This document shows positions 21,774-40,019 of a stretch of 64,000 bases of DNA, one piece after another. The notes beneath the pieces are model-generated. The model was not told the origin of the DNA, did no database searches, and saw only the letters and a program-made list of their open reading frames with translations. Where the stretch lies: sequence record NC_023688.1; one strand, written 5' to 3'. The position numbers and the translations under genes are program-made. The first letter of the stretch is position 1, and every line of letters begins with the position of its first letter.

Positions 21774-21893
21774 TGGCGGGGAAGACGGGACTCGAACCCG
21801 CGACCAATAGTTTAATTTGCGTTGGCTTGCTGTAAAGAATCTTCTCAGATTCCGCTTTTTGCGTCTACTGCTCTACCACTGAGCTACTTCCCC
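21774..21893 (-). ncRNA. tRNA-like RNA 1: acceptor, D and T arms, CCA end; anticodon arm replaced by hairpin + UUUACAGCAA module
   Basis: GGGGAAG/CTTCCCC-G-CCA; GCTC AGTGGTA GAGC; GCGGG TTCGAGT CCCGT; insert GAATCT-GAGA-AGATTC-TTTACAGCAA. Confidence 0.75.
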
Positions 21894-21901: not shown

Positions 21902-22038
21902 ACAACACTATGCTGGCGGTGCCGGATTCGAACCGAGCGTTACAGGCTTAACAGGCGAGTATTTATTGCGGAAAACATTCTCGTCAGAATGAATTTTACA
22001 GTGTCCTACCACTAGACGAACCGCCAGCATAATGTTGT
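21902..22038 (-). ncRNA. tRNA-like RNA 2: 19-bp extended acceptor helix; anticodon arm replaced by hairpin + UUUUCCGCAA module
   Basis: ACAACATTATGCTGGCGGT/ACCGCCAGCATAGTGTTGT; Glu/Asp-type D arm GTCTAGTGGTAGGAC; TCGG TTCGAAT CCGG; insert CATTCT-GACG-AGAATG-TTTTCCGCAA. Confidence 0.72.
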
Positions 22039-22167: not shown

Positions 22168-22181
22168 AACTATCTTAACAC

Positions 22182-24368: not shown

Positions 24369-25811
24369 TTAGAAATCAATACCGACGTATCGGTCGCTCA
24401 TGATCTTGTCAAGCATGATTTGCATCGGGTTAAACTCTTTTGCACTCAGGATTGTCTCCATGATTGCAGGACTAAAACCAGATACCAACGCAGTGCCTTG
24501 ATCGTCTTTGGTCACCGGATTGTTAGTCGGGCGCGGGCAAAGATTCCAGAACACAAGTTTCGGCATTTCGTAACCAGCATCGCGGTAAGTCTGACGAATC
24601 ACCTCAAAGTTGGTACGTTCGCGGTCACGCATACGATAGTATCCGCTATAACCGCCGTCTGCAACGTTGAATTCCATGTCAGACAATACAACCATCATAG
24701 ACGGCATATCAGACTGCGGAACTCGATGTTTCACGGCACGATCAAGAATGATCTTGAATGCACCAGCGAAGTTGGTAGAACCACCCCACGGAGCGCGTCC
24801 CAGATGATTCACCATGCTTTGCAGATCGTCGCCTTTCGCTTTGATGTTGTAGAACTGAGGATTATCATCGAAGGTAATCACTTCGTTCTTGAACACACCA
24901 CCAGAGCGTTCACCGATATACAGACCCAGAGAGATCGCGATATCCATAGCAGACAGACCAGCGACGGCAGTCGGGGTGCTCATAGAGCCAGAAACGTCAA
25001 CCATTGCGATTACGTTTTCAGTAGAGCCAGCCATCCAGTCGCGTTGTGCTTTCCATTGTGCATCAGCAGCAACAGAAGAACCGGTACGCAATGATTTGAT
25101 CATGTCATACGGGTACACAGCACCAGCGTTGATCTTAGCTTCGCCCTTTTTCAGAGACTCAAGATAAGCAACATAACGCTCATTCGCATTTTTCAGGAAT
25201 GCTTTCTGATATCGGGCAGATGCAACAGACGGCAGTTTACCGAAATCAATTCCATCCCACTGACGAGCACACATTTTTTGTTCAACGGTGTTCGACATAC
25301 GGACGATTGTCTGACGATACTCTTTAGCAGTCATACGCATAGCTTTGGCCAGAATACCAGCTTCTTTGCCTTTGCGAGGAGCCCACTTAGCAGCAAGACC
25401 GTTCTGTTTGATCAGAATCGCGTCCACCATGATAGCGACCGCAGCATCTTCGATTGGAGTACCAATCATTGAAACAACGTCCTTATAACGACCGATTTCC
25501 GGTGTGTTCATCAGAACGACGGTAGCGTCAACTTGATGGCGATGTGCCAGCAGTTTCAGCAGACGAATGAACTGTTCACGCTCACCAGCACCACCGCGAA
25601 TATCGCGAGCCCATTGCAGAATACGAACTGCCCAATCCGGAGATTCGGTGTAAGCTTCCACAAACATGGAACTCAGATCTTTACCGCGAGCGGAACCGAT
25701 TTGAGAAAACAGATTCAGACACTTATCACCAGTGGTATAGTTAGTAACTGCACCGTTCGCGGTACGTGCCAGTGCTTGCGCTTGAGTCATTGCATTCATA
25801 AAATTAGACAA
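24369..25811 (-). CDS. DUF2828-type protein (TROVE/Ro60-like helical domain + vWA)
   Basis: RTANGAVT...LNLF, WARDIRGGAGERE, AAKWAPR and LPSVA motifs; MIDAS VDVSGSM and VLSDMEF; TTG start with GAGG site. Confidence 0.85.
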   Translation of the reverse strand: MSNFMNAMTQAQALARTANGAVTNYTTGDKCLNLFSQIGSARGKDLSSMFVEAYTESPDWAVRILQWARDIRGGAGEREQFIRLLKLLAHRHQVDATVVLMNTPEIGRYKDVVSMIGTPIEDAAVAIMVDAILIKQNGLAAKWAPRKGKEAGILAKAMRMTAKEYRQTIVRMSNTVEQKMCARQWDGIDFGKLPSVASARYQKAFLKNANERYVAYLESLKKGEAKINAGAVYPYDMIKSLRTGSSVAADAQWKAQRDWMAGSTENVIAMVDVSGSMSTPTAVAGLSAMDIAISLGLYIGERSGGVFKNEVITFDDNPQFYNIKAKGDDLQSMVNHLGRAPWGGSTNFAGAFKIILDRAVKHRVPQSDMPSMMVVLSDMEFNVADGGYSGYYRMRDRERTNFEVIRQTYRDAGYEMPKLVFWNLCPRPTNNPVTKDDQGTALVSGFSPAIMETILSAKEFNPMQIMLDKIMSDRYVGIDF

Positions 25812-25846
25812 AGAAATTACCTCTTTCAGGTTTGTTTAAAATAGTC

Positions 25847-26811: not shown

Positions 26812-27237
26812 TTACAGAACAGGCACCACGGTGATAGCGGAACTAGCGTTGTCGCCATCCATTTTCTTGGTGTAACTTACGTAAACCATGTTCATATGCT
26901 CTTTGTCATAAACACGGTCGATTACCATGTTTTTGAAGAACCAGCTTTTCTTCTGTGAGAAGATGTTTTTGCGAGAAGTCAGTTCAACGCCAGATTCGAA
27001 CGGTGCGGTCACACACTGCATGGCAACATCAGTCTGGTCTTCGATGCTCATAGAGCGAGACGGCAGGTTGACGTAACAAGTAATGTTCGGATAGTCCGGG
27101 TCGCTGAATACTTCTACACTCAGAGTATCTTTGAAGATCAGACCGGAGGTTTCTACTTCATACAGAGTATCAGCTTTAACGGCACCAACAGCCAGCATGG
27201 CACACACGAACATCACGTTTTGAATAATCTTTTTCAT
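26812..27237 (-). CDS. creA: CreA-family exported protein
   Basis: Signal peptide; F.DPDYPNITCY...Q.....C...KKSWFFK.M.I.R.YD...Y.SY...S.ITVVPV pattern. Confidence 0.75.
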   Translation of the reverse strand: MKKIIQNVMFVCAMLAVGAVKADTLYEVETSGLIFKDTLSVEVFSDPDYPNITCYVNLPSRSMSIEDQTDVAMQCVTAPFESGVELTSRKNIFSQKKSWFFKNMVIDRVYDKEHMNMVYVSYTKKMDGDNASSAITVVPVL

Positions 27238-29248: not shown

Positions 29249-29331
29249 GGCGTCAGAAGGCGGGACTCGAACCCGCACCCCACTGGGTTTCTGCCCAGTA
29301 GCTCTTCCAATTGAGACTTACAACTAACACC
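29249..29331 (-). ncRNA. Degenerate tRNA-like element (pseudo-tRNA)
   Basis: Intact T arm GCGGG TTCGAGT CCCGC; 6-bp stem with 6-nt loop CAGAAA; mismatched inner acceptor; no CCA. Confidence 0.55.
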
Positions 29332-29928
29332 TATTATTTATTAGATCTCTTCGGCAGCGTCTGCCACCATTTCTGCTAACTTCTCTTCGTTGTCACTAAC
29401 AATCAAACAACGAGCTTCGTTGATCTCACGGCGATATGGATCCAAATCACCATAGCAGTATTCAGCACCACTTTTCATGATGTCGCGAATTTCATCCGCA
29501 CAATCTTCCAGATAATCTTCGTCCACGATATCTTTTCTGGCGAGAAATGCCACGATTTGCCAGCGTTGATGAACAACTTTCTTTTTGTAGCCTTCAATCA
29601 TCAGAATCATGTTCGTATTTCCAGTTTGCTTTGTGCAAAGCCTTGTGCATTTTAAAGTTGAAATCGTCTTTCTGTCTAGCCAGTTCTCGATTGAATGCGA
29701 ACTCACTAGCACAGGCAATCAACATCTTTTTGTCTTCTACCGCGTTAAACGGAGATTGTGCAACAAAGACAACTTTGTTTTGTTGATGCATTTCGTTGAT
29801 ATAACGACAAACCCGCTCGCCGTTGTCAAACAGTCGAGATAGATAGAGTCGTTGAAACTGAGATAATCGGACTTTCTTGTCCTTGTCAACGTCGATATAA
29901 TGCATAGCATCACCTCAAATGAATTTAG

Positions 29929-30692
29929 TGGCCCCGGTGGGAATCGAACCCACAACGAGCGGTTATTCTTTTAAGAACTCGATTATGGATTTTCCATTCT
30001 CCAATTCTTTAATTTGTGAACTTTTAAGGACGATAAGGTTTTTAACGGACTTCCACTTACAACGATCTCGTTCACGCTCATAACCTTTAACCTCTATGTA
30101 AAGATCCATAGACGGTAGATAAAAGTCCGGAAAATATAGATGTTCTCCGTTTTCCCAGCTATAAACGAAAGGAGTAATCTCGTTAGTGTATTCTATGTTA
30201 GCAGAACTTAGGCATTTTGCAACCAATAGTTCCCATTTCCCTTTAAATGTTTGTCCTTCAAACGCATACATCTTAACGCGACCAGATACGTTGTTTTGCT
30301 GTAAGAATCTGGGTTGTTTTTAACAACTTCCTTCATGACTTTCGAAAATTTAATTCTTTGTTCGTCCGTCCAAATGGTCTCATTCATACTCTTTGCGGCA
30401 TCGGATAACTTTTTCTAGTCTCTTCCGAAATGACAGGTTTATCCAAACCAAGTCTGGTCGCTTTTGTGTATTGGTTTGTGCCTTTACATCCGAGTTTCGA
30501 TGGAACGTGAAACTTTATTTTATTTTGGATTTTTGGAACAACGAACTTCGTGTTGTCTAAGTGAATTTTGTATTCTTACAGATTTTGTCGCAGTATGCGC
30601 AGTTCATTAGATTATCTCCTAGATTGTGTTATATCACTATTTATCTAAGAGATTGTGTGAGCCGCTTGCTTGAACCCTCTAGCTACGGGGCC
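29929..30692 (-). tRNA. tRNA-Ile2-like (CAU), split in the anticodon by a 692-nt insert
   Basis: 5' half 30692-30658 GGCCCCGTAGCTAGAGGGTTCAAGCAAGCGGCTCA joined to 3' half 29965-29929 TAACCGCTCGTTGTGGGTTCGATTCCCACCGGGGCCA gives a canonical cloverleaf. The GGCCCC acceptor resembles Ile2. Confidence 0.8.
29963..30606 (-). mobile_element. Homing endonuclease-like gene (Zn finger + NUMOD3-like + PD-(D/E)xK), frameshifted in its 5' half
   Basis: Intact C-terminal ORF 30271-29963 with PDFYLP...IEVKG. The upstream part reads MNCAYCDKICK..SLRQHEVRC...SEETRKKLSDAAK...YSKNNVSGRVK once four single-A indels are corrected. Confidence 0.75.
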
Positions 30693-30732
30693 TTGTTTAT
30701 AGGAACCATTATTACATAGTCCCTATTTGTTG

Positions 30733-31125
30733 TCAACCTTTAAGATTCAGTTTGTATCGAATAGAACTCATGAAACTCATGATGTCTTCCAACAGATTTA
30801 CCAGATCGAAATGACGTTTGGTTTCCAGATACTCATGCACCATAGTACACTCTTGTAGGAAATTGTCAATCAACATTTCAACTTCAACTTCCGCATGTGA
30901 CACAGAAAATGTCTGAGCATAACCGCGAGCAATAGAAGCCTCAGCAAACGCATCTACCAACTCAGGTAAGCTTGTGTAATATTCGTTTAGTGCCATATGT
31001 CTGCTATAGACGGTCGTCACCAGATGATTGTGGTGAACGTAGGCCACGCTTTTCAACAGCTTGCAGATTAGATCACCAACGCTTGAGTTCGTATCGCCTT
31101 TGAAATCTTTAAATGAACTACTCAT
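30733..31125 (-). CDS. Ferritin/Dps-like four-helix protein (tentative)
   Basis: HHNHL...RHMALNEYY...LVDAFAE...DLVNLLEDI pattern. Confidence 0.55.
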   Translation of the reverse strand: MSSSFKDFKGDTNSSVGDLICKLLKSVAYVHHNHLVTTVYSRHMALNEYYTSLPELVDAFAEASIARGYAQTFSVSHAEVEVEMLIDNFLQECTMVHEYLETKRHFDLVNLLEDIMSFMSSIRYKLNLKG

Positions 31126-31172
31126 TGTATTCTCCTAATGAAAAAGGGAGCCGAAGCTCCCTTTTATTTATC

Positions 31173-31257
31173 TGGTGCGGATGGTCGGACTCGAACCGAC
31201 ATGCCCGGAGGCGCTAGATCCTAAATCTAGTGTGACTGCCAATTTCACCACATCCGC
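31173..31257 (-). tRNA. tRNA-Leu(UAG)
   Basis: CTAGA TT TAG GA TCTAG, long V arm, CCA. Confidence 0.95.
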
Positions 31258-31263
31258 ATTATT

Positions 31264-31351
31264 TGGAGGAGAAAGTGGGATTCGAACCCACGGACTCTTG
31301 CGGGCCTACGAATTAGCAATCCGCTACGTTCGGCCTCTCTGTCATTTCTCC
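31264..31351 (-). tRNA. tRNA-Ser(GCU)
   Basis: GCGGA TT GCT AA TTCGT, long V arm, CCA. Confidence 0.9.
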
Positions 31352-31707
31352 ATGTTCTTTAATGTATTCGGCAGCTCGTTTAATCTGTTCCCATTGAGAA
31401 TCAGTAACACACTGACCGGATAACACGAACGAGGCTCTTACGTTTTCCTCGATCTCTTGTTTTAAGCTTTGCAATAGTGAGTTCCTCTTCGAACAAAACC
31501 GCCAAAGTCTTTTTGTCCAATGCAATGAACACCGCGACTAACTTTGATAAGTCCAAGTTTTAACAGCTTTTCAATCTGTTGATTGGTACACTTAGCATCA
31601 CCTTGAGTAGTAGCGAAACCGTATGAATCAGCTTTATCAGCGAAACGGGATGCCAGCTCAAGATCTTGTTTTGTTGCTTTCATGATATAACTCTCTATTG
31701 TTTGATT

Positions 31708-31799
31708 TGGCGGAAGCGATCCGATTCGAACGGATGGACGGGGTTAACCGCCGACACTTTTCAAGAGTGTTGCAATAAGCCGGACTCTGCCACGCTTCC
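31708..31799 (-). tRNA. tRNA-Ser(UGA)
   Basis: ACACT CT TGA AA AGTGT, long V arm, G73-CCA. Confidence 0.95.
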
Positions 31800-31940
31800 A
31801 AATTCTTCGACACGGCTTTATGTCGTCGTGATTCTTGATCATTACGATCTGGCTACACACGCGCATCACCTTCCCGTTTGATAATTTAACGAGCTACGGG
31901 AATCATAGCAGCTCATTTAGCCTTTAGCAAGCTAAAAATG

Positions 31941-32013
31941 CGGGGGTAACTGGGCTCGAACCAGTGCATGACGGAATCAAAGTCCGTTGCCTTACCAACT
32001 TGGCTATACCCCT
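31941..32013 (-). tRNA. tRNA-Gln(UUG)
   Basis: ACGGA CT TTG AT TCCGT; no encoded CCA. Confidence 0.92.
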
Positions 32014-32126
32014 ATAAACTGGGACGAATATGAACGTTTAACGTGGGTCATCGTCTTATCGTTTCGGTAACTTAATCCTACTTTGTGTAACCCCACATCA
32101 TTCAACGCAACGCTGAATCAATTTTG

Positions 32127-32200
32127 TCCGTCATATAGGATTTGAACCTATGACCCTCTGATCCCAAACCAGATGCGCTACCGGACTGCGCTAATGACGG
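32127..32200 (-). tRNA. tRNA-Pro(UGG)
   Basis: TCTGG TT TGG GA TCAGA; 3' end CAA. Confidence 0.92.
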
Positions 32201-32214
32201 AGTATTCTTTATAA

Positions 32215-32321
32215 TAGGACGCTAAGGTAGAGAATCGAACTCTACATGAAATCAATACCGACGGGGCAATCTATATCCCGACTTTCGAGAAGCTATCTCA
32301 TTGCACTTAAAAGCATTAGCG
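32215..32321 (-). ncRNA. tRNA-like RNA retaining only an acceptor-like stem and T arm
   Basis: CGCTAA/TTAGCG terminal stem, GTAGAG TTCGATT CTCTAC T arm, about 70 nt non-tRNA interior. Confidence 0.55.
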
Positions 32322-32346
32322 ATTTCACCTTTCAAAGCGATTAAAC

Positions 32347-32423
32347 TGGTGCATCGGACTGGACTTGAACCAGTGACCAGCGGATTTTCAATCCGCCACT
32401 CTACCATACTGAGTTACCGATGC
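32347..32423 (-). tRNA. tRNA-Phe(GAA)
   Basis: GCGGA TT GAA AA TCCGC, CCA. Confidence 0.95.
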
Positions 32424-32430
32424 AAAATTT

Positions 32431-32507
32431 TGGGGTGGCGGACGGGCTTCGAACCCGTGACTATCAGGATCACAACCTGAAGTTCTACCAAACTGAACTA
32501 CCGCCAC
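32431..32507 (-). tRNA. tRNA-His(GUG)
   Basis: TCAGG TT GTG AT CCTGA, C73-CCA. Confidence 0.95.
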
Positions 32508-32588
32508 ATAAATGATCACTCGAAAGAAATCATTTATGTAACGAGTTACATACCAGATGCTACAAACGGGGCATCTGGATCCCTCTTA

Positions 32589-32673
32589 TGGTGCTCGGCA
32601 CAAGATTCGAACTTGCGATGCCTTTCGGTCTGGATTACAAAACCAGTGCATTCAACCACTCTGCCAACCGAGC
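32589..32673 (-). tRNA. tRNA-Thr(UGU) with an atypical long variable arm
   Basis: CTGGT TT TGT AA TCCAG; V arm ACCGAAAGGCATC; CCA. Confidence 0.8.
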
Positions 32674-32682
32674 GTTTTAAAT

Positions 32683-32774
32683 TGGTGGATGCGGTAGGAT
32701 TCGAACCTACAACGTTTACCCTGTGGGGCCAGATTTACAGTCTGGTGCAATACCACCGTCATTGCAGCACATCC
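32683..32774 (-). tRNA. tRNA-Tyr(GUA)
   Basis: CCAGA CT GTA AA TCTGG, long V arm, CCA. Confidence 0.95.
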
Positions 32775-32799
32775 ATTATTCTTTATTTAGTACGCTAAG

Positions 32800-32873
32800 A
32801 AGCGAGTACCTGATTCGAACAGGTGATCTCTGGGATATGAGCCCAGCGAGGACGGCCTCTCCTCCAACTCGCA
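32800..32873 (-). tRNA. Initiator-type tRNA-fMet(CAU)
   Basis: CTGGG CT CAT AT CCCAG (three G-C pairs); unpaired 1:72; no CCA. Confidence 0.85.
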
Positions 32874-32893
32874 TCTTAGCGCACTAATCAATT

Positions 32894-32969
32894 TGGTTCT
32901 CCGTATGGAATTCGAATCCATGTTACCGCCGTGAAAGGGCAGTGTCCTAGTCCACTAGACGAACGGAGA
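32894..32969 (-). tRNA. tRNA-Glu(UUC)
   Basis: CTGCC CT TTC AC GGCGG, CCA. Confidence 0.93.
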
Positions 32970-33248
32970 TCTGTCAGTAAGCGAAACTAAACAATCGTCT
33001 TTGTTTTGCTTTTAAGTCTTCTTCGACAACAGAGACATTATCGCATGTTTCCGCAGTAGAGTAAACATCTTTTTGTTTTTCTTTTTCAGCGGCTTCCGCT
33101 GCTTTCTTTCTAGCAAGTGGGCCAACGTTTTTCCACAAAGGCGCGTTGTACCATGCTGCACTACATTGATTGCCAGAGCCACGATTGGCGCGAGCGTCTA
33201 AATCATTACTCATTATAAACTCCTTTAATAGCAAGTCTATTTAGTACC

Positions 33249-33381
33249 AAATTTAAATGCACTGTCTAGATCCCCGCAGGTGGTTCCCACCTACTAGCCT
33301 TTGTTCGCACAAGCTTGCGGCTCTTAGCTACATACGAGGGCTTATCTCGTCACATTTAGGTTAGGGCAATGCACTTAAATT
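33249..33381 (-). ncRNA. Candidate structured ncRNA (about 130 nt)
   Basis: Terminal helix AAATTTAAGTGCA/TGCATTTAAATTT enclosing several hairpins; no ORF. Confidence 0.5.
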
Positions 33382-33455
33382 TGGTGGAGACGACGGGATT
33401 TCCGCCCGTATCTCAGATCCCAGTGACCTGCGATTATGAAGTTATCTACGTCCCC
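33382..33455 (-). ncRNA. Non-canonical cloverleaf with Ala identity (G3.U70, A73, CCA)
   Basis: GGGGACG/CGTCTCC-A-CCA; CAGGT CACTGGG ATCTG; T-like arm ACGGG CGGAAAT CCCGT; lacks U33, G18G19 and TTC. Confidence 0.65.
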
Positions 33456-33502
33456 GAGAAGGCTTAAACGTAACGAGTCAGAGGTTTAAGCGCGATTGAA
33501 TT

Positions 33503-33577
33503 TGGTGGTGCATAGTAGATTTGAACTACTGACCGACGGCGTATGAAACCGCAGCTCTACCACTGAGCTAATGCACC
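33503..33577 (-). tRNA. tRNA-Met(CAU), elongator type
   Basis: GCGGT TT CAT AC GCCGT, CCA. Confidence 0.88.
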
Positions 33578-33769
33578 AGACGGTATCAAGAGTCGATACC
33601 GAGGCAATAATATTGATTGAACTTATACTACCGCTATATAGGCCGCAGTATAAGAAGCGCGTTGGTGTCAATAGTAACGTTTAAGTTATTCGCCACACAC
33701 AACAATCACCGCTTTTTATAGCCTATCGCCACGCAATAAGTATATAGCCTATTGCTTGACTCGACTATT

Positions 33770-33845
33770 TGGTCCGCCGTGGTGGGTATGATCCACCAAC
33801 CTATCGGTTAAAAGCCGATTGCTCTACCAGTTGAGCTAACGGCGG
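33770..33845 (-). tRNA. tRNA-Lys(UUU) with atypical T loop
   Basis: ATCGG CT TTT AA CCGAT; T loop ATCATAC; CCA. Confidence 0.9.
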
Positions 33846-33853
33846 TTTGTTCT

Positions 33854-33924
33854 CAGGGGCGGTAGGAGTCGAACCCACCTCAACGGATTTGGAATCCGCC
33901 GCATAACCGATTTGCTACGCCCCT
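33854..33924 (-). tRNA. tRNA-Trp(CCA)
   Basis: GCGGA TT CCA AA TCCGT; no encoded CCA end. Confidence 0.9.
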
Positions 33925-34740
33925 ATATTCTTACCAGCTATCAAAATCCGTAATAGGAACGCTCTTTGCTCCATCTTTGACAGCTTTAGCACTAACTACA
34001 GTACCGATTGAGCCGCTTTGATATTCAACATCAATCAAGTTCGTTTCGTGCATCTGCATGAGTTCCATCATACGCTGAATCTCAAGCTTTGTAAACCTTA
34101 CTTTATTCATTTTTCACCTACAGAATAGGAGCTTCGATTGTGACATCAAGAACGGAATAATACGTGCCGTAATCCGAACTTTTATCGTTGTAATGTGCGC
34201 GAACTTTACAATCGGCATCATCCACATCTTCCGCTTCTACCAACTTAATGGTATCGAATGACTTAGATGATCCCATGTATTCGCTTTTCATATAACGTAT
34301 CTTAGCAAGAAACAACATCGGTGTCAACCCTTAGCGTATAGATTTTCGAAGTATGTTCAGACATAGGCTGAACACCGCAAATTTCATCAGCAATCAGCTT
34401 TGGAGCGAGTCTAGGACTAACAGAAAGTCTATTGAAGATCACTTGATTTCCTTTATCCCAATACTGTTGTCTTTTAATCGCCGAAATCTGCTTAGACTTG
34501 ATTTCCGTCTCTTCTGCTTTCAGAAGTTCGAATTCCAAATCATCGCTATAGACAACACCATACGCGATTACGCTATCAAAGTCAATAGGACATTCAGGCG
34601 TTTCTGTATATCTAATGATCTGCCTCAGTGTTCGAACATCATCTTGAAACCAACCGCAGTTGATAAAGCAGTGTCCAACACAATCGCCGTTCTTCATGAA
34701 CAGCGCCCAACTAGGTGCGCTCATAACTTATTTCTCAATT

Positions 34741-34815
34741 TGGAGCACAGGATCTGGATCGAACAGACGATAAAGTGATTTGCAATCACTTGCCTTACCT
34801 CTTGGCTACCTGCGC
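34741..34815 (-). tRNA. tRNA-Cys(GCA)
   Basis: AGTGA TT GCA AA TCACT, U73-CCA. Confidence 0.95.
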
Positions 34816-34824
34816 ATGTTAAAT

Positions 34825-34898
34825 TGGAGCCTCATTCGGGAATCGAACCCGACACTACGACTTGGAAGGACGGTATGTGACCACTACACCAATGAGGC
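34825..34898 (-). tRNA. tRNA-Gly(UCC)
   Basis: CT TCC AA loop (anticodon stem with two mismatches), U73-CCA. Confidence 0.85.
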
Positions 34899-34967
34899 AC
34901 TTCGAGTAGTCGAGCCGACTTATCCGTATTCTTTCAACGGTGAGCTGATAGCTACTCTAAAAATTTG

Positions 34968-35041
34968 TGGAGGTTAAGGGGCTCGAACCCTTGACCTACT
35001 GGTTGCAAACCAGTCGCTCGTTCCAACTGAGCTAAACCCCC
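34968..35041 (-). tRNA. tRNA-Ala(UGC)
   Basis: ACTGG TT TGC AA CCAGT; G3.U70. Confidence 0.93.
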
Positions 35042-35079
35042 AAATTCTAATAGATACTCGCAAGTATACATTAGAATAG

Positions 35080-35202
35080 GCACTTTATGCAAGTACCTAC
35101 GCAAGTCTTCGGATTCACATACGGGAGTGGTGACTAACCCACGTTACTTTTACCTGCTGTTCCCTCTCAGCCGCACATCCAACTACCGAAGTAAAGGAGT
35201 GC
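35080..35202 (-). ncRNA. Candidate structured ncRNA with CUGAGA and ACAGCAG loops
   Basis: GCAC..TTTA/TAAAGTGC, CTTCGG/CCGAAG, GGGA/TCCC and GTGG/CCAC stems; no ORF. Confidence 0.5.
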
Positions 35203-35316
35203 TATCTTTTAATAGTAGATTTGAAGTTTTGTATTGGTTGCAGAAGTGAATCCATGCATTTTCAAAGAACATTGAACTACTGTCGGGTAAGTTCATTTTT
35301 CCTACTAGGTAGAAAC

Positions 35317-35393
35317 TGGCAGTGACGACGGGGCTCGAACCCGCGCTCTCCGACGTGACAGGCCGGAATTTTAACCAACTAAACTACGTCACT
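35317..35393 (-). tRNA. tRNA-Asp(GUC)
   Basis: CCGGC CT GTC AC GTCGG, G73-CCA. Confidence 0.95.
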
Positions 35394-35399
35394 AGAAAC

Positions 35400-35474
35400 T
35401 GGTAGCCATGGGCAGGATTGAACTGCCGACCCCACCCTTATCAGGGGTGTGCTCTACCACTGAGCTACATGGCT
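35400..35474 (-). tRNA. tRNA-Ile(GAU)
   Basis: CACCC CT GAT AA GGGTG, CCA. Confidence 0.95.
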
Positions 35475-35481
35475 ATAAACT

Positions 35482-35588
35482 GGAAGACTTTTAACTGCCA
35501 CCTGGACTCTTGTGCTAGAGAGTTGAGGAATCGAACCTCACTGTTTTCTTGTTAATAGAAAAATTCGAATGGTTTGCTGAAATCTTCC
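35482..35588 (-). ncRNA. YrlA-like (Y RNA-like) permuted tRNA mimic with CAGCAA motif
   Basis: GGAAGATTT/AAAGTCTTCC terminal stem, then CAGCAA, T arm TGAGG TTCGATT CCTCA, closed acceptor-like ACTCT..AGAGT, and D-like loop CCAGGTGGCAG. Confidence 0.68.
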
Positions 35589-35611
35589 GTAGCACGGTAA
35601 ATTGTTATTTG

Positions 35612-35692
35612 CGGAGACGGCTGGACTCGAACCAGCATAGAGTTAACCTCACGGATTAACAGTCCGTCGCTCAACCTTTGAGCCACGTCTCC
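35612..35692 (-). tRNA. tRNA-Asn(GUU) with an atypical long variable arm
   Basis: ACGGA CT GTT AA TCCGT; V arm GAG-GTTAA-CTC; no CCA. Confidence 0.88.
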
Positions 35693-35718
35693 CAAATAAC
35701 AACTTGCAAATAAGAAAC

Positions 35719-35781
35719 AGAGTGAACTTTATAGGCTATTTCAAAATAATGGCTTTTTAAGTTGGTTGCTGAAATCACTCT
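35719..35781 (-). ncRNA. Short stem-CAGCAA RNA (element B)
   Basis: AGAGTGA-TTTCAGCAA...TCACTCT; own TTTACA-17-TATAGT promoter. Confidence 0.62.
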
Positions 35782-35793
35782 TTATCTTTGTTT

Positions 35794-36009
35794 ACTATAC
35801 ACTACTATTTAGTGATTGTAAAACAAAGACTTCTTAAATCTTTACTCTAACAGGCTCACTTTTGTTTTTCATCCGCAGAAAAGTTTTGATTGCTGAATGG
35901 AGCCTTATAAAGATTGTATCACGGTTTATCAACGCTGTAAACTATCTTTTATTTATGCTCTACTTTAAGAGCATGTGATAATGATAGCACAGTGTTTTAA
36001 TAGAGTAAA
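35794..36009 (-). promoter_or_regulatory. Three tandem sigma70-type promoters
   Basis: -35/-10 at 35822-17/35799-94 (TTTACA/TATAGT), 35941-36/35918-13 (TTTACA/TACAAT) and 36009-04/35986-81 (TTTACT/TATCAT); all have 17-bp spacers. Confidence 0.75.
35852..35905 (-). ncRNA. Short stem-CAGCAA RNA (element C)
   Basis: AGGCTC-CATTCAGCAA...GAGCCT; own TTTACA-17-TACAAT promoter. Confidence 0.62.
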
Positions 36010-36277
36010 CAATCTTTTTCTCGATATCCCCACATTGTTTCATGCTACTGCCGGTTGAGTCCGAAGACCGAATAAGGGTTCACTTCCACGTTAGGTTTAC
36101 GGCATACCGAGAAAAAGACAGTCCGCATCACAGTGTTAGCGCAAGGGGTTCCACTGTCACTAAGTTATTTAGTGTCTACTGTCAACCAGCTAGGTGGGCG
36201 CTGGTCCCGTCCATACGAGCATGATGCCACCAATACATGCTCGGAAAGATCTTACGGTTTCTCGAATCTCGAAATCT

Positions 36278-38627
36278 TTACTTGTCGTAATAATATGGCT
36301 TGCATTGACCTTCGAACTTGGTTTGACCACCGAAGAATCCAACGCGATTCTCGCCATATGTATCTTGTGCATTTTCTTCCGCGACTTTCAGCGCGGCTCT
36401 GCACTCTGCTTCGGTGTCGAACTTCTCAATTGCATGACTATGTGAGCCATAATTGGTACCAAAGTTAACGAACAACGAAGTAATCAACAAGAACTTAATC
36501 ATACTACACCTTTATTTAGTAGTAAACATTTAACGAGTTTCGCAGGAATACACTTCTTTCACGCGAGTTACAGAACGTTTGGTAACGTTAATGGAGCTAC
36601 CCTGATACCAGCGAGACTCAGAGTCCAACACTTTATCAACAATCGCCTCAGACTTAGGCAGAATCGCGGCAGTTTTCATTCTTCAATCTCCACAACTCGA
36701 TTTGTTTTTACAAGATGATCCCACAGCTTTTGATAAGGGATTGAATAATCTTCCTTTTCGTTGCAGCAAGAACAACCTTGTTCATAGTAAACGGTGATCC
36801 AGTTCATGTCAAGCTTGTATCCGTATCCGTAGAAGTGACGACTGCCATGATTTGGTTTGCCCAGCTCATAATTTACGACCTCTTCCAATGCGGTATCAAT
36901 ACCGTCGGAGTCGATAAAGTCTTCCGGTGCGTCTTGCTTACGCAAAGCGTCCATAAAGTCAAACAGATTATCAATTTTCATTTTCATTTCCTCATTAGCC
37001 ATAGTAATACGTTATCGCATTAATATGGCGGCTCTTTCGAGCCACCTCTTAGAAATCAGGTCATTCGTCTTTCACGATTAGACCTCCTTGAACTCCACGA
37101 TATTTGAAATCTCGTTGAACTCACCGTATTTCCTCATTGACGGAACAAGATTACCGTTCTCGTCATGAATCAGATCCGGGTTTTCTTTCCACTTATTAGC
37201 TGATACGTATTCTGACACAGCATCCGCATTCAAGTCAACAACTAATTTCGGATGAATTTTCAGCGGGTATTCGCGAGACTGATCATTCTCAGCACCAGCT
37301 ACCACGATTCGAGTCATCAGATCGGCGTGATAAAGATGATCATTGTCCTGACTGCCGTATTGCTGCGGGTTAAACTCGATGTTAAGTTCACACAACATGC
37401 TAACAAACTTACGAAGTCCGATATGCAGCTCTGCATTAGCGGCAGTGAATTTAATAACACGATTTGTCAAATTGTTTTTAGAGTAAGGACCCATTCCAAT
37501 GTTGATAACACTATCGTATTCCCAAGAGAAACCCATACTGAGATATTCATTACACAGATCATTTGTCAGTTCAGCACGAATGATTTCAGGCGCTTTCTCG
37601 ATTTCTTCCATTCTCAACTGTAATTCTTCTTTAGTCAAGCGTTTTTTATCTGGATCTCGAATTTCAAGCTTGGCGAAGACTTCACGAATCTTTTTGTGAG
37701 ACTCGATAGCGTAATCTTTGTTCCAAGATTGTTCCAATGTGCGGTCGTACTCCGCTACCATCAGATCATAGACTTTGCGCTTGATTACCATGAACATGAC
37801 TGGCGATTTCTTTGAACCCATAAACGAGGAAGCCGGTTGAATAAACAATTGTTCCCCGTGCATTAAGTCCTGATAAATCAGCTTGTTCGGATCAAACAGA
37901 TCATCAATGTTGATCTTGCGATCTTCGTCACAAACGATATGCGTCTTTACCATGTCTTGAAACGCTTGATATGCGTCGTTGTCTTCGATATCGAAGTTGC
38001 CATAGTCATCATAAGTCGCATACAGTGGAAGATGCATGGCAAGCTGGTATCGATCCCAGTTATAGCAACCCGGAGCGGCTGGAATTGTTTCGCCGTGACA
38101 GACAAGCGCGAGTAAAACAACCGGCTCACCACAAGTCACGATATGACGACTGACACCACAAATAGTATTGAAAGAACCCACGATATTTTCCCTTTGATAA
38201 GTTACAAAAAAGCCCCAGTTAAGGGGCTTCCAAATTGTTAAGCAATAGCTTCCAGAACAGCGTCGATGGATTCTTCAATCATCAGACGGGTCGGACGCTC
38301 GAACTCAGCGACGCGAATACTCAGCATAACTTCGCCTTGCACGTTTTCATGCAGACCGACGATCTTTTCGGCATTCACAACGAACTTGGCGACACCGCGA
38401 CTTTCGACCGGAGTAACAACAGTTCGTTTGATAAAGCAGTCTTTCAGCTTGAGTGCCAGATCTTCGAACTTCTCGGCAACTTGATAAACAGTCGGCAGTT
38501 GACCTTCAACTTTAACAGTGATCAGAGTCTGACCGCCGTGAGTTTTAACCAGACCAACTACTTTTTCGGAGTTGACTACGAAACGAGTGATGTTACCAGC
38601 AACCGGAGATACGATAAAACGAGACAT
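36278..38627 (-). other. Hypothetical ORFs (74-367 aa) within the tRNA region
   Basis: Minus-strand ORFs 36278-36502, 36676-37002, 37078-38181 and 38238-38627; the last has two tandem similar halves. Confidence 0.6.
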
Positions 38628-38894
38628 TATAATTCCTTAAACAGTTATAGAAAATACGTGTTGGCCATTCTGAATGATTCCAACGTTGTTGTCAACGAAA
38701 ACTTTAAAATTCATTTCCTTTGACATTTCGATGTGAGCGTTCGCAGCTTCTAGCGCGACTACACTCGGGTATTCATGTCTTTCACCAGCGAAGATACAGA
38801 TGCCGTTTAGACCGTAAACACGTCCACTAAAGCTTCCGTCTTCATCTTGGTCTAGTATACAGATCAATTTCAACGTGTCAATCTCTTTTTTGTT

Positions 38895-38979
38895 TGGTGC
38901 GGATAGTGGGACTCGAACCCACACGCCCGAAGACTTGGGATTTTAAATCCCCTGCGGCTACCGATTACGCCATATCCGC
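38895..38979 (-). tRNA. tRNA-Leu(UAA)
   Basis: GGGGA TT TAA AA TCCCA, long V arm, CCA. Confidence 0.93.
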
Positions 38980-38987
38980 GAAATTCG

Positions 38988-39069
38988 TGGGAGATACCGG
39001 ACTCGAACCGGTACGTCAGAAGACGGTAGATTTTGAATCCACTGCGGCTACCAATTACACCAATCTCCC
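38988..39069 (-). tRNA. tRNA-Leu(CAA)
   Basis: GTGGA TT CAA AA TCTAC, long V arm. Confidence 0.93.
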
Positions 39070-39161
39070 AAAATAATGCGCGTCCGGAACTCTCTTGTAT
39101 AAAATTGGACTTTATGAGTGTCAGTTCCGACGCGACTTTTTCTGTTGTGTAAAACACATTG

Positions 39162-39261
39162 TCGAGGCGACTGGATTCGAACCAGCGACCGAGTGCTTCT
39201 TATGTGCTCTCGTAAAAGTTCATAAGAAGGCACTTGCTCTATCCGTCTGAGCTACGCCCCG
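39162..39261 (-). tRNA. tRNA-Arg(UCU) with a 26-nt insert between positions 36 and 37
   Basis: AGTGC CT TCT [TATGAACTTTTACGAGAGCACATAAG] AA GCACT; acceptor, D and T arms canonical. Confidence 0.82.
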
Positions 39262-39286
39262 GCAATGTGTTCTTGAATGACTGGAA

Positions 39287-39784
39287 TCAAGGACTCCAGT
39301 CAAAATTTAAATCTTCTGTATACTCTTCAAGTATACGCAAGTTGTAATCGATTGTAAACGACTTTGGCAAAACAAAATCAGGGCCAACATCATAACTAGC
39401 GGTAATGTGTGGATGATAATCAGGATAATCATGAGTTGCCCCATGTTTCTCTCTGATCTCTTTGTGTCTAGCGCCAAACCAAGGGTCTGTGAGCTTTAGC
39501 ACAAGAGCACGTTTGCCGCTTTGTGTTTCGAAGATATCAGGAATCATGACACCTTGCAACGTTTTTTCCATAGTACCATACGCTTTGAAATCAGGCAAGT
39601 ATTTTCTGGAGTAAACCAACGTGGTGTGCATCTTATCATAGGGTACCAGATTAGGGATACCCATTTCGCGACATCTTCTAACAATAGCCATAGCAGTGCG
39701 AGGCTTGTAACGAACTGCTACATAAGTGCCTCGCGTTTCTTTTTGCTCCGTCGTCTCAGTGAATTCTGAAAACGACAGCATCAT
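39287..39784 (-). CDS. 57B: gp57B / Acb1-like 2H phosphoesterase
   Basis: Two HxT motifs (MHTTLVYSR, HPHITASY) and ATHDYPDY; synteny with 57A and 1. Confidence 0.9.
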   Translation of the reverse strand: MMLSFSEFTETTEQKETRGTYVAVRYKPRTAMAIVRRCREMGIPNLVPYDKMHTTLVYSRKYLPDFKAYGTMEKTLQGVMIPDIFETQSGKRALVLKLTDPWFGARHKEIREKHGATHDYPDYHPHITASYDVGPDFVLPKSFTIDYNLRILEEYTEDLNFDWSP

Positions 39785-39785
39785 A

Positions 39786-40019
39786 TTACTCGCTTACCAG
39801 CTCGCCGTCAACTGCTTTCGGAGCTTTCAGCTCTGCAATCTTAGCCAGATATGCTTCCGGTTGAGTTGCAGCTTCGCCTTCCAGTCCCAGCTCTTTAGCC
39901 AGTTGAGCGAAGAAACCTTGATAAAACTCAGATTCTTGAGTGCGAGCTTCTTGAGCATCAAACAGACGAACTTTCAGACTGTTCAGTTGTGCTTGCAGTT
40001 GTTGAACTTGTTCTTGCAT
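39786..40019 (-). CDS. 57A: gp57A tail-fibre chaperone
   Basis: LKVRLFDAQE coiled coil; position between 1 and 57B. Confidence 0.8.
   Translation of the reverse strand: MQEQVQQLQAQLNSLKVRLFDAQEARTQESEFYQGFFAQLAKELGLEGEAATQPEAYLAKIAELKAPKAVDGELVSE

What the first reader, a model, noticed from the sequence alone, without database searches (positions are those of the whole stretch)
35482..35588. Same tRNA-mimic RNA present in two circular permutations
Seen: element 35482-35588 runs stem5'-CAGCAA, T arm, closed acceptor-like hairpin, D-like loop, stem3', which is the YrlA order. RNAs at 21774-21893 and 21902-22038 run in normal tRNA order (open acceptor, D arm, T arm). In these, the motif stem is capped by a tetraloop (GAGA or GACG) in place of the anticodon arm and is followed by CAGCAA/CCGCAA. 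Joining their acceptor ends and opening the tetraloop gives the topology of the 35482 element. Inference: these are permuted isoforms of one RNA class, possibly showing how Y RNAs arise from tRNAs. RNA 1 keeps a CCA end and might be aminoacylated or CCA-repaired.
Basis: partly seen in the sequence, partly recalled or inferred. Interest (0 to 1): 0.8.

Follow-up and report, generated by a model that had tools for sequence, protein, structure and literature searches.

The report
Phage Y-like RNAs, two circular permutations
This Aeromonas phage encodes several small tRNA-mimicking RNAs that share one conserved module (a helix followed by CNGCAA), belong to a widespread and apparently undescribed RNA family encoded next to a phage Ro60-like protein, and occur in the same genome in both a Y-RNA-like (permuted) and a tRNA-like (unpermuted) connectivity.

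Summary
The window is Aeromonas phage PX29 (T4-like), bases 62001-126000. Element 35482-35588 (minus strand) has a 9-bp terminal helix, then CAGCAA, a hairpin, a T arm, a closed acceptor-like hairpin and a GG loop. RNAs at 21774-21893 and 21910-22030 are tRNA-shaped, with a capped helix plus CAGCAA/CCGCAA in place of the anticodon loop.

A gene 2.3 kb upstream of these two on the same strand (24369-25799, Pfam DUF2828) models as a full-length Ro60 fold. I searched 78 other phage contigs carrying this gene. Permuted tRNA-like RNAs with the same 5' module (about AAAGAAUCnnUUyCNGCAA) lie beside the gene, and all 38 matches are on its strand. All five helices covary: 95.5% of cells are paired, against 33-39% when partners are slid.

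The family also occurs in mycobacteriophage LeBron, a Felix-O1-like phage and a Bacillus phage.

A profile of that module, built without window sequences, ranks the two unpermuted RNAs 3rd and 4th of 127,964 window positions.

Rfam YrlA does not reach threshold, and the motif differs from YrlA's GNCGAA.

I conclude these are Y-RNA-like partners of a phage Ro60-like protein. This is a new variant of a known kind, with a genuine natural circular permutation. Binding, function and the direction of evolution are inferred, not shown.

The parts
35482..35588 (-). RNA4. Permuted (Y-RNA-order) member with a reduced tRNA-like domain. It has a 9-bp terminal helix, CAGCAA, a variable-arm-like hairpin, a T arm, a closed acceptor-like hairpin and a GG loop. 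It has no D stem. It lies between tRNA-Asn and tRNA-Ile.
   Evidence: Sequence. Covariation. Model R2 scores 28.7 bits full length.
21774..21893 (-). RNA1. tRNA-order member with an open 7-bp acceptor, D arm, anticodon-like stem and T arm. The helix GGAAUCU/AGAUUCU is capped by GAGA and followed by UUACAGCAA. It ends in an encoded N-CCA.
   Evidence: Module profile rank 4. Annotated in GenBank as tRNA-Leu with an intron.
21910..22030 (-). RNA2. tRNA-order member with an acceptor helix of 7+4 bp and no CCA. The helix CAUUCU/AGAAUG is capped by GACG and followed by UUUUCCGCAA. The T stem covaries among relatives.
   Evidence: Module profile rank 3. An orthologous RNA is at L079 9570-9687.
35717..35783 (-). 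RNA5. Mini member with no tRNA-like domain (compare YrlB). Terminal helix AGAGUGA/UCACUCU, then UUUCAGCAA.
   Evidence: R2 29.8 bits. Terminal helix changes compensatorily to GGAAUGA/UCAUUCC in relatives. Profile rank 1. A promoter-like site ends at 35794.
35850..35907 (-). RNA6. Mini member. Terminal helix AGGCUC/GAGCCU, then CAUUCAGCAA, with an internal hairpin.
   Evidence: R2 32.1 bits. Helix changes C-G to G-C in phiAS5. Profile rank 2. A promoter-like site ends at 35913.
35109..35255 (-). RNA7 (candidate). An 8-bp terminal helix, GGAUUCAC (35253-35246) with GUGAAUCC (35118-35111). UUCUGCAA follows the 5' strand and GA follows the 3' strand. The interior is about 125 nt and is not obviously tRNA-like.
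   Evidence: Profile rank 5. Sequence and fold. Conserved in Ah1 and Aeh1 without informative variation.
24369..25799 (-). Gene for a Ro60-like protein (Pfam DUF2828 + DUF7788/vWA, 476 aa). It is the inferred protein partner of the RNAs.
   Evidence: Pfam. AlphaFold model pLDDT 85. Best structural matches are Ro60 over the full length, E about 2e-7, TM 0.6. Homologues occur in 694 phage records.
35794..35941 (-). Two sigma-70-like promoter matches, 35941->35913 and 35822->35794, each 10 of 12 positions. Each is placed 6-10 nt upstream of the predicted 5' end of RNA6 or RNA5.
   Evidence: These are consensus matches only: 3 found against 1.4 expected.

Best explanation
The element at 35482-35588 and the RNAs at 21774-21893 and 21910-22030 are non-coding RNAs of the Y-RNA kind. 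At least three further RNAs in the window belong with them.

They share one module: a 6-9 bp helix whose one strand is followed, after about 0-5 mostly U residues, by CNGCAA, with an A-rich stretch on the opposite strand. I infer that this module is the docking site for the phage's own Ro60-like protein (gene 24369-25799). The inference rests on analogy with the GNCGAA/CGAA module of bacterial and phage Y RNAs.

Attached to the module is a tRNA-like body:
- In the permuted form the RNA ends sit in the module helix and the acceptor stem is closed by a loop. This is the common form in other phages. Element 35482-35588 is a reduced version of it.
- In the unpermuted form the module helix is capped by a tetraloop and the acceptor is open. 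RNA1 then looks like a CCA-ended tRNA lacking an anticodon loop.

What is shown: the architecture, the covariation, the genomic linkage to the gene and the permutation relationship.

What is inferred:
- The protein binds the module.
- The resulting particle acts on RNA during infection. By analogy with Ro60/Y RNA/PNPase complexes, and given the frequent neighbourhood of tRNA clusters and RNA ligases, it may tether the Ro-like ring to tRNA-handling or RNA-decay enzymes, or gate its cavity.
- RNA4 is released from the tRNA precursor by the tRNA-processing nucleases. Its 3' end lies 7 nt before tRNA-Ile and its 5' end 22 nt after tRNA-Asn.
For: (1) Protein.
- The PX29 protein matches DUF2828, DUF7788 and vWA.
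- Its AlphaFold model (pLDDT 85) matches Ro60 structures 1yvr, 2i91 and 9nf8 over about 570 columns. E is about 2e-7 and TM about 0.6, far ahead of vWA-only matches.

(2) Family.
- Model R1 was built from 5 seeds in other phage contigs. It found 22 full-length RNAs.
- 95.5% of cells are paired. There are 153 double-change cells against 43+-6 in shuffles. Slid controls give 33-39% paired. All five helices covary (alignment).

(3) Linkage.
- 38 of 38 R2 matches (E<0.01) in 78 loci are on the gene's strand.
- Many lie 15-100 nt upstream of the start codon: L080, L086, L059, L090, L083, L027.

(4) Breadth. The family occurs in LeBron just 3' of gp53 (72 bits), in Felixounavirus PK6 (62 bits), in Bacillus phage Izhevsk (45 bits) and in a KVP40-like contig.

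(5) Window members.
- R2 scores RNA4 28.7, RNA5 29.8 and RNA6 32.1 bits.
- The module profile ranks RNA5, RNA6, RNA2 and RNA1 as positions 1-4 of 127,964, and RNA4 as 11.

(6) Permutation.
- R2 matches across the RNA2/RNA1 junction at 38.9 bits. Its terminal-helix and acceptor pairs are flagged non-canonical there, so the real units are in tRNA order.
- Capped helices covary: GGAAUCU/AGAUUCU, GGAUUCU/AGAAUCU, CAUUCU/AGAAUG and UUAUACU/AGUAUAA.
- The conserved G after the 3' strand of the terminal helix in permuted RNAs is the first loop base (G) of all capped forms.

(7) Precedent.
- YrlA RNAs have the motif near the 5' end, a permuted tRNA-like domain, and lie within 4 kb of rsr on the same strand (PMC4201824).
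- Thermus phage phiLo Ro60 binds two upstream Y-like RNAs, and single substitutions in their CGAA motif lower affinity 3-4 fold (PMC12135203).
Against: - No binding or expression data exist for any of these RNAs or for the DUF2828 protein.
- The Ro60 assignment rests on a predicted fold. Pfam TROVE did not match at E<=0.01.
- RNA4 lies 9.7 kb from the gene. It scores modestly and lacks the D arm and anticodon-like stem.
- Only 27 of 78 DUF2828 loci gave a model match, although many contigs are short.
- Same-strand bias is partly expected in phage gene blocks, where tRNAs are co-oriented too.
- The covariation counts were made on an alignment fitted to the model.
- Rfam YrlA does not reach threshold.
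Confidence: 0.7

Rival explanations
1. RNA1 and RNA2 are ordinary decoding tRNAs interrupted by a short intron in the anticodon loop, as the GenBank records imply. Element 35482-35588 would then be unrelated.
For: - PX29 annotation calls 21777-21893 'tRNA-Leu' joined from two pieces.
- Aeh1 annotates the orthologue as tRNA-Val CAC.
- Rfam tRNA scores it 54.3 bits with an insertion.
Against: - The two annotations disagree on the anticodon.
- ARAGORN calls no tRNA there, and RNA2 gets no Rfam tRNA match at E<=10.
- The insert is about 45-50 nt, far below group I intron size (established knowledge). No 7-nt anticodon loop can be restored.
- The insert carries the class-specific module, which ranks 3rd and 4th in the whole window with a profile from unrelated phages.
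- The capped helix covaries.
Confidence: 0.05
2. The elements are decayed or rearranged tRNA pseudogenes, scars of recombination in a tRNA cluster with no function of their own.
For: - They sit in or beside tRNA clusters.
- RNA4 has lost the D arm.
- Permuted models also hit tRNA-tRNA junctions by construction. Rfam YrlA matches 32374-32480 and 33800-33911.
Against: - Compensatory changes maintain every helix across phages whose Ro-like proteins are only 30-50% identical.
- A non-tRNA sequence module is conserved.
- The elements are consistently placed next to one gene family and on its strand.
Confidence: 0.05
3. The RNAs are cis-acting. They could be leader or trailer structures that regulate or stabilise the mRNA of the DUF2828 gene, for example by autoregulatory binding, or processing signals within tRNA precursors. 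They would not be trans-acting Y-like RNAs.
For: - In many loci the RNA ends 15-100 nt before the start codon of the gene.
- RNA4 is flanked within 7-22 nt by tRNAs.
Against: - In PX29 none of the six RNAs adjoins the gene. They lie 2.3 kb downstream and 9-10 kb upstream.
- In LeBron and PK6 the RNA is downstream of the gene.
- RNA5 and RNA6 have their own promoter-like sites.
- Several copies per genome are usual: four in L024, two each in L090, L013 and L058.
- Co-transcription with later processing is also how yrlA/yrlB are made, so adjacency does not argue against a trans role (PMC4201824).
Confidence: 0.12
4. The module is recognised by some other factor, such as a host tRNA enzyme, a nuclease of a defence system, or the ribosome. 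The RNAs would then be decoys or inhibitors working independently of the Ro-like protein.
For: - tRNA mimicry and location in tRNA clusters fit this.
- An anti-defence gene (Acb1) lies nearby.
- Phage tRNAs are known to counter anticodon nucleases (my own knowledge, not checked here).
Against: - The tight genomic linkage to DUF2828 genes holds across very different phages.
- The module sits where Ro60-binding motifs lie in known Y RNAs (PMC4201824, PMC12135203).
- The two ideas are not exclusive.
Confidence: 0.1

Closest known systems
YrlA / bacterial Y RNAs (Rfam RF02553; Chen et al. 2014, PMC4201824)
   Same: - The 5' and 3' ends pair.
- A short conserved motif sits on the 5' strand.
- The tRNA-like domain runs in permuted order: variable region, T arm, closed acceptor-like hairpin, D arm.
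- The RNA is encoded beside a Ro60-type gene on the same strand.
- Smaller companion RNAs without the tRNA domain exist (compare YrlB).
   Different: - The motif is CNGCAA preceded by about GAAUCnnUU, not GNCGAA(N)G.
- The Rfam model stays far below its gathering score: none at E<=10 on RNA4, and 24.7 and 39.8 bits on relatives against 69.
- The partner protein belongs to Pfam DUF2828 rather than TROVE.
- An unpermuted, CCA-ended isoform exists.
Thermus phage phiLo Ro60 with Yrl1/Yrl2 (PMC12135203)
   Same: A phage-encoded Ro60-type ring protein has its own small RNAs encoded next to the gene. A stem plus internal-loop motif is needed for binding.
   Different: - The phiLo RNAs carry CGAA and were not described as tRNA-like.
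- The phiLo protein is a recognisable TROVE protein.
- Binding and PNPase recruitment were shown experimentally there. Nothing is shown here.
Naturally circularly permuted structured RNAs: two-piece (permuted) tmRNA, permuted tRNA genes of the red alga Cyanidioschyzon, and permuted forms of hammerhead and twister ribozymes (my own knowledge; Rfam holds tmRNA_permuted, seen)
   Same: The same fold is encoded with the chain ends moved to a different helix.
   Different: - Both connectivities coexist in one genome here.
- No sign of circular intermediates or of splicing-type processing was looked for or found.
M. smegmatis YrlA cleaved by RNase P with CCA added (PMC4201824)
   Same: It produces a Ro-bound RNA with an open, CCA-ended acceptor stem, which is the end state that RNA1 encodes directly.
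   Different: - There the open acceptor arises by cleavage, giving a two-piece RNA.
- Here it is a one-piece RNA, because the other helix is capped.
T4 stable RNAs species 1 and 2 in the tRNA cluster (my own knowledge, not checked)
   Same: Small stable non-tRNA RNAs are encoded within the tRNA cluster of a T4-type phage.
   Different: No sequence comparison was made. As far as I recall, T4 has no DUF2828 gene.

Membership tests
Rfam YrlA (RF02553) | Covariance-model score at or above the gathering score of 69 bits | tested here: not met
   - No match at E<=10 on 35482-35588, or on RNA1/RNA2 as units.
- Relatives score 24.7 bits (L042) and 39.8 bits (LeBron, E 2e-5).
Rfam YrlA (RF02553) | GNCGAA(N0-1)G motif near the 5' end (PMC4201824) | tested here: not met
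   The conserved motif is C[A/C/G/U]GCAA, occasionally GCAU, and it lies after the terminal helix.
Rfam YrlA (RF02553) | tRNA-like domain in the order V region, T arm, closed acceptor-like hairpin, D arm | tested here: met
   - Met with covariation for the family.
- For 35482-35588 the T arm and closed hairpin are present, but the D arm is reduced to a GG loop.
Rfam YrlA (RF02553) | Encoded within about 4 kb of a Ro60 orthologue on the same strand | tested here: inconclusive
   - RNA1 and RNA2 lie 2.3-2.6 kb downstream on the same strand.
- 35482-35588 lies 9.7 kb away on the same strand.
- In other phages the RNA is usually within 1.5 kb.
- The gene is Ro60-like by predicted fold only.
Y RNA (functional definition) | Bound by a Ro60-family protein in vivo | not testable with these tools
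   Needs immunoprecipitation or gel-shift experiments.
tRNA (RF00005), for RNA1 and RNA2 | Cloverleaf with a 7-nt anticodon loop, recognised by tRNA finders | tested here: not met
   - RNA1 scores 54.3 bits on Rfam tRNA only by treating about 46 nt as an insertion.
- ARAGORN does not call it.
- RNA2 has no Rfam tRNA match at E<=10.
- Neither RNA has an anticodon loop.
Ro60 / TROVE proteins, for gene 24369-25799 | HEAT-repeat ring plus C-terminal vWA domain | tested here: met
   - The predicted structure (pLDDT 85) aligns with Ro60 structures over the full length, E about 2e-7, TM about 0.6.
- This is a predicted structure, not a solved one.
Ro60 / TROVE proteins, for gene 24369-25799 | Match to the Pfam TROVE profile | tested here: not met
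   - Pfam reports only DUF7788, DUF2828 and VWA_2 at E<=0.01.
- phmmer against PDB gives only E about 0.8 to the phiLo TROVE protein, in the vWA part.

The most novel reading that the evidence does not exclude
The same Ro-docking module is displayed on two topologically different carriers with different fates.

- One carrier is a closed tRNA mimic (Y-RNA topology).
- The other is a one-piece body that is processed by RNase P and ends in CCA (RNA1). It can enter tRNA pathways such as the CCA-adding enzyme, elongation factor, tRNA repair ligases or anticodon-nuclease surveillance while carrying the Ro-like ring.

The tandem arrays of these RNAs would then record how tRNA-shaped and Y-shaped RNAs interconvert, by duplication followed by trimming.
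Probability: 0.3. Interest if true: 0.85.

Novelty: new variant of a known kind. Interest (0 to 1): 0.72.

Why it matters
Ro60 and Y RNAs are known from animals, from about 5% of bacteria and from a few phages. How Y RNAs evolved and why bacterial ones mimic tRNA remain open questions.

- **A partner for a large orphan protein family.** DUF2828 is found in 694 of 50,697 phage records and in over 6,000 protein clusters. It would gain a candidate RNA partner and a testable binding motif.
- **Tractable laboratory systems.** These include Felix-O1-like coliphages on E. coli K-12 and LeBron on M. smegmatis.
- **A natural experiment on topology.** Permuted and unpermuted forms coexist in one genome. 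This allows a test of which functions need the tRNA ends and which need only the Ro module.
- **Annotation.** It explains several 'tRNA with intron', 'tRNA-OTHER' and pseudo-tRNA calls in phage genomes.

Tried and rejected
- **Rfam.** A gathering-threshold scan of the whole window, and E-value scans of 21000-40000 and of nine related loci, gave no family other than tRNA at threshold. The YrlA hits in the window (32374-32480 and 33800-33911) are tRNA-tRNA junction artefacts.
- **Naive hairpin search.** A regex search for a hairpin followed by CNGCAA over the loci was too noisy: 78 hits on the gene strand against 55 on the other. I dropped it in favour of T-arm-anchored and covariance-model searches.
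- **First seed alignment (A4).** It misaligned L057 by one column in the D/anticodon stems. I rebuilt it without L057 and L086 (A5).
- **Pair counts on alignments A9 and A10.** I did not count pairs on these MAFFT alignments. phiAS5/Wae14 in A9 and the KVP40-like rows in A10 are shifted by one column or by a gap in the terminal helix. Those helices were read per sequence instead.
- **Third covariance model.** I did not build one for the tRNA-order form. A descriptor search already showed only the Aeromonas phages and L079.
- **RNA3 (22041-22165).** It contains UCGCAA in PX29, but Aeh1 has a different loop, so it is not counted as a motif-bearing member.
- **Literature.** I found no paper on partner RNAs of DUF2828 proteins. 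Three sources could not be read:
  - Burroughs & Aravind 2016;
  - the Sim et al. 2020 review;
  - the supplementary tables of Chen et al. 2014.

  Prior mention there cannot be excluded.
Full report
**Identity of the window**

The window is identical to Aeromonas phage PX29 (NC_023688.1, Straboviridae), bases 62001-126000. All 23 tRNA genes found by ARAGORN and the 22 Rfam tRNA matches lie on the minus strand. The elements of the finding must be read on that strand.

**The observation**

Read 5'->3' on the minus strand, 35588->35482 has these parts in order:
- GGAAGAUUU, which pairs with AAGUCUUCC at the 3' end (9 bp);
- CAGCAA;
- a spacer;
- a 6-bp hairpin (UUUUCU/AGAAAA);
- a T arm (UGAGG-UUCGAUU-CCUCA);
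- a closed 5-bp hairpin (ACUCU...AGAGU);
- a loop holding GG.

The RNA at 21893->21774 has a 7-bp acceptor stem, a D arm, a 6-bp anticodon-like stem, a T arm and an encoded N-CCA. Where the anticodon loop should be, it has an A-rich strand, the hairpin GGAAUCU-GAGA-AGAUUCU, then UUACAGCAA and a linker.

The RNA at 22030->21910 is built the same way, with CAUUCU-GACG-AGAAUG followed by UUUUCCGCAA. Its acceptor helix is extended to 11 bp and it has no CCA.

So the description is accurate. There are three small corrections:
- the bounds of the second RNA;
- the anticodon-like stem is kept, and only the loop is replaced;
- 35482-35588 has neither a D stem nor an anticodon-like stem.

**Conservation of the flagged element**

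Orthologues of 35482-35588 exist in Ah1, Aeh1, phiAS5 and avDM12. They also exist in two KVP40-like contigs (L016 3610-3728 and L018 2141-2258).

| Helix | PX29 | Relatives |
|---|---|---|
| Terminal helix | GGAAGAUUU/AAGUCUUCC | GAAAGAUUU/AAGUCUUUC, GGAACAUUU/AAGUGUUCC, GGAACAUUG/CAGUGUUCC, GAGUGUU/AACACUC |
| T stem | UGAGG/CCUCA | UGGGG/CCCUA |
| Closed hairpin | ACUCU/AGAGU | GCUCG/CGAGU, CAGAG/CUCUG, CAGUG/CACUG |
| Extra hairpin | UUUUCU/AGAAAA | UUUUUC/GAAAAA |

CAGCAA is invariant. This is a selected RNA structure, not a chance fold.

**The neighbouring gene**

The gene at 24369-25799 is on the same strand, and RNA1 and RNA2 lie 2.3-2.6 kb downstream of it. GenBank calls it 'RNA-binding protein'.
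- It matches Pfam DUF2828, DUF7788 and (marginally) VWA_2, but not TROVE.
- An AlphaFold2 model built from 28 homologues has mean pLDDT 85.
- Its six best PDB matches are Ro60 structures aligned over the whole length, with E about 2e-7 and TM about 0.6. Next come isolated vWA domains at E>1e-3.
- Homologues are common. More than 6,000 clusters pass E<=1e-5.
- They occur in 694 phage records. These include Felix-O1-like, Listeria, Staphylococcus, Campylobacter, Bacillus, Vibrio and cluster-L mycobacteriophages. In the mycobacteriophages the gene is annotated 'Ro-like RNA binding protein'.

**A family of RNAs beside that gene**

I fetched 80 viral contigs encoding 44-50%-identical homologues, plus PX29 and Aeh1 themselves. 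T arms that are not part of tRNAs often carry CNGCAA 27-50 nt upstream: 35 of 100 on the gene strand against 8 of 42 on the other strand. Many are followed by a closed acceptor-like hairpin and a normal D arm. A helix formed with the strand just 5' of the motif closes the whole RNA.

A covariance model from five such RNAs (R1) found 22 full-length members.

| Measure on that alignment | Value |
|---|---|
| Pair cells forming standard pairs | 95.5% |
| Same, with partners shuffled | 65.7% |
| Same, with partners slid 1-3 columns | 33-39% |
| Pairs with double changes | 23 of 28 |
| Cells with double changes | 153, against 43+-6 in shuffles |

Each of the five helices covaries: terminal, anticodon-like, T, closed acceptor and D. 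The alignment was fitted to the model, which favours the structure, but the compensatory changes are plain by eye.

The conserved sequence is 5' AAAGAAUCnnUUyC(A/C)GCAAu at the start and an A-rich stretch followed by UGAUUCUGA at the end.

A second model from these 22 (R2) gave 38 matches at E<0.01 in 78 loci. All are on the gene's strand. Many lie within 15-100 nt of the start codon.

R2 also finds the RNA in distant phages:
- 107 nt downstream of LeBron gp53 (72 bits);
- in the tRNA cluster after the gene of Salmonella phage PK6 (62 bits);
- in the tRNA cluster of Bacillus phage Izhevsk (45 bits).

**Membership of the window's RNAs**

R2, which contains no window sequence, matches 35479-35591 over its full length at 28.7 bits. 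The terminal helix, motif, T arm and closed hairpin are aligned, and the D arm is deleted.

It also matches two short RNAs, 35717-35783 (29.8 bits) and 35850-35907 (32.1 bits). These have only the terminal helix, the motif and an A-rich return strand. Both short RNAs show compensatory changes in relatives. Each has a sigma-70-like promoter match ending 6-10 nt before its predicted 5' end.

I built a 19-position profile of the 5' module from the 22 foreign RNAs and scanned both strands of the window:

| Rank (of 127,964 positions) | Element |
|---|---|
| 1 | RNA5 |
| 2 | RNA6 |
| 3 | RNA2 |
| 4 | RNA1 |
| 5 | further candidate at 35109-35255 (8-bp terminal helix) |
| 11 | RNA4 |

So the tRNA-order RNAs carry the family's specific, non-tRNA module.

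**The permutation**

In both connectivities the order is the same around the circle: helix strand, U-rich spacer, CNGCAA, linker, anticodon-stem 3' strand, variable loop, T arm, acceptor 3' strand, then acceptor 5' strand, D arm, anticodon-stem 5' strand, A-rich strand, helix strand. The only difference is which helix is capped and which is open.

Three results fit this:
- R2 matches 21845-21983 (38.9 bits). This is the 3' half of RNA2 joined to the 5' half of RNA1. The terminal-helix and acceptor pairs are flagged as non-canonical there. That is what a tandem pair of permuted units should give, and it shows that the true units are the tRNA-order ones.
- The capped helix covaries among tRNA-order RNAs.
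- The base after the 3' strand of the terminal helix is an invariant G in the permuted family. It is the first base of the capping loop in every tRNA-order RNA: GAGA, GAUUA, GUCA, GACG, GAUA and GUUA. Joining typical permuted ends (...CU-GA and AA-AG...) would give a GAAA-type tetraloop.

**Distribution of the two forms**

A descriptor search for tRNA-order members found only RNA1 and RNA2 in the six Aeromonas phages, plus one RNA in the metagenomic contig L079 (9570-9687). The search required a perfect or near-perfect 7-bp open acceptor, a capped helix, the motif and a T arm. The L079 RNA shares the linker AUACUCGCnUGnUAAGCC with RNA2.

The permuted form is therefore the general one, and the tRNA-order form looks derived. 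Tandem copies of permuted RNAs are common (L090, L024, L013, L058). This makes permutation by duplication and trimming plausible, but that is inference.

**Comparison with known families**

The architecture is that of YrlA as described by Chen et al. (PMC4201824):
- paired ends;
- V, T, acceptor-like and D elements in that order;
- a gene for a Ro60 orthologue within 4 kb on the same strand;
- smaller companion RNAs.

Membership fails on two tested points.
- The Rfam YrlA model gives nothing at E<=10 for 35482-35588. It gives only 24.7 and 39.8 bits for relatives, against a gathering score of 69.
- The motif is CNGCAA, not GNCGAA.

The LeBron match (E 2e-5) shows that the two families are related at the level of the tRNA-like domain.

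Phage Ro60 with Y-like RNAs is itself known:
- mycobacteriophages, CcrColossus and Bacillus phage G, as cited in PMC12135203;
- Thermus phage phiLo, where CGAA mutations weaken binding and host PNPase is recruited.

LeBron gp53 inhibits M. smegmatis growth when over-produced (PMC13148394).

I found no paper describing RNA partners of DUF2828 proteins, the CNGCAA module or an unpermuted Y-like RNA. Three relevant sources could not be read.

**Mechanism**

*Shown:* structure, conservation, linkage and permutation.

*Inferred:*
- The helix plus CNGCAA docks the Ro-like protein.
- The tRNA-like body recruits or imitates tRNA partners, or stabilises the RNA.
- RNA4 is cut out of the tRNA precursor by tRNA-processing enzymes.
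- RNA1 is matured like a tRNA.
- The particle acts in RNA surveillance, repair or decay during infection.

Context that fits this, without proving it:
- DUF2828 genes sit beside tRNA clusters in PK6, LP-124, Izhevsk and the Rhizobium phage.
- RtcB and RNA ligases lie nearby in LP-124 and the Rhizobium phage.
- LeBron has an RNA ligase and a polynucleotide kinase.

Aminoacylation of RNA1 is unlikely. It has no anticodon and no G3:U70, and its discriminator base varies.

**Verdict**

The elements are best filed as a new variant of the Y-RNA/YrlA kind, tied to a very common phage Ro60-like protein family, with a natural circular permutation present in one genome.

Noticed in passing
window 22041-22165 (-): RNA3, a third tRNA-like RNA directly upstream of RNA2.
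- It has an 11-bp acceptor helix (7+4 bp) and a D arm.
- A short tetraloop hairpin stands in place of a 7-nt anticodon loop.
- It has two T arms (ACGG-UUCGAAU-CCGU and GUUGG-UUCGAAU-CCAAC).
- ARAGORN calls it tRNA-Ala(cgc), and Rfam tRNA gives only 22 bits.
- It is conserved in all six Aeromonas phages.
- It has no conserved CNGCAA. Function unknown.
   Followed up: partly
window 39162-39261 (-): A tRNA-like RNA annotated as tRNA-Lys with an intron; Rfam tRNA scores it 52 bits. Its anticodon stem is prolonged by a 9-bp helix (CUUCUUAUG/CAUAAGAAG). That helix carries a 16-nt loop containing CUUUUA. A normal tRNA-Lys(UUU) exists at 33770-33845. It could be an unusual tRNA or a decoy.
   Followed up: no
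window 35109-35255 (-): RNA7, a candidate sixth motif-bearing RNA. It lies in the 275-nt gap between tRNA-Asp and tRNA-Ala. It has an 8-bp terminal helix and UUCUGCAA. Its interior of about 125 nt does not look tRNA-like. It is conserved in Ah1 and Aeh1.
   Followed up: partly
window 39287-39784 (-): RefSeq annotates this gene as '57B RNA ligase'. It matches Pfam Acb1 (anti-CBASS protein) at E 9e-36, so the product name looks wrong.
   Followed up: partly
window 32374-32480 and 33800-33911 (-): The Rfam YrlA model gives weak matches (32.7 and 22.5 bits) spanning the 3' half of one tRNA and the 5' half of the next. This artefact is expected from the permuted architecture of the model. It is a caution for anyone scanning tRNA clusters with YrlA.
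   Followed up: yes
window 29260-29276, 29937-29953 and 32228-32244 (-): Orphan T-arm-like hairpins with perfect 5-bp stems and a UUCGAnU loop, lying outside any called tRNA. The first lies under a weak tRNA-Sec match and the second under a tmRNA 3'-end fragment match. Model R2 matches none of them.
   Followed up: no
L048 11614-11743, L060, L066, L071, L077, L085 (about 200-350 nt after the DUF2828 gene); also L048 11404-11560: In one group of contigs, pairs of AU-rich RNAs of about 55-65 nt with the terminal helix and motif follow the gene directly. A larger RNA with ACUGCAA, a T arm and a closed hairpin precedes them. This suggests mini and tRNA-like members are commonly encoded together.
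   Followed up: partly
L093 (Listeria phage LP-124) 7845-11500; L097 (Rhizobium phage) 10735-11407: RtcB-like ligase and RNA ligase genes lie within a few kb downstream of the DUF2828 gene. This echoes the rsr-yrlBA-rtcBA arrangement of Salmonella.
   Followed up: no
window 34302-34724 (-): A 140-aa ORF inside the tRNA cluster is annotated 'major head protein' in RefSeq. That is implausible for its size and place. Not checked.
   Followed up: no
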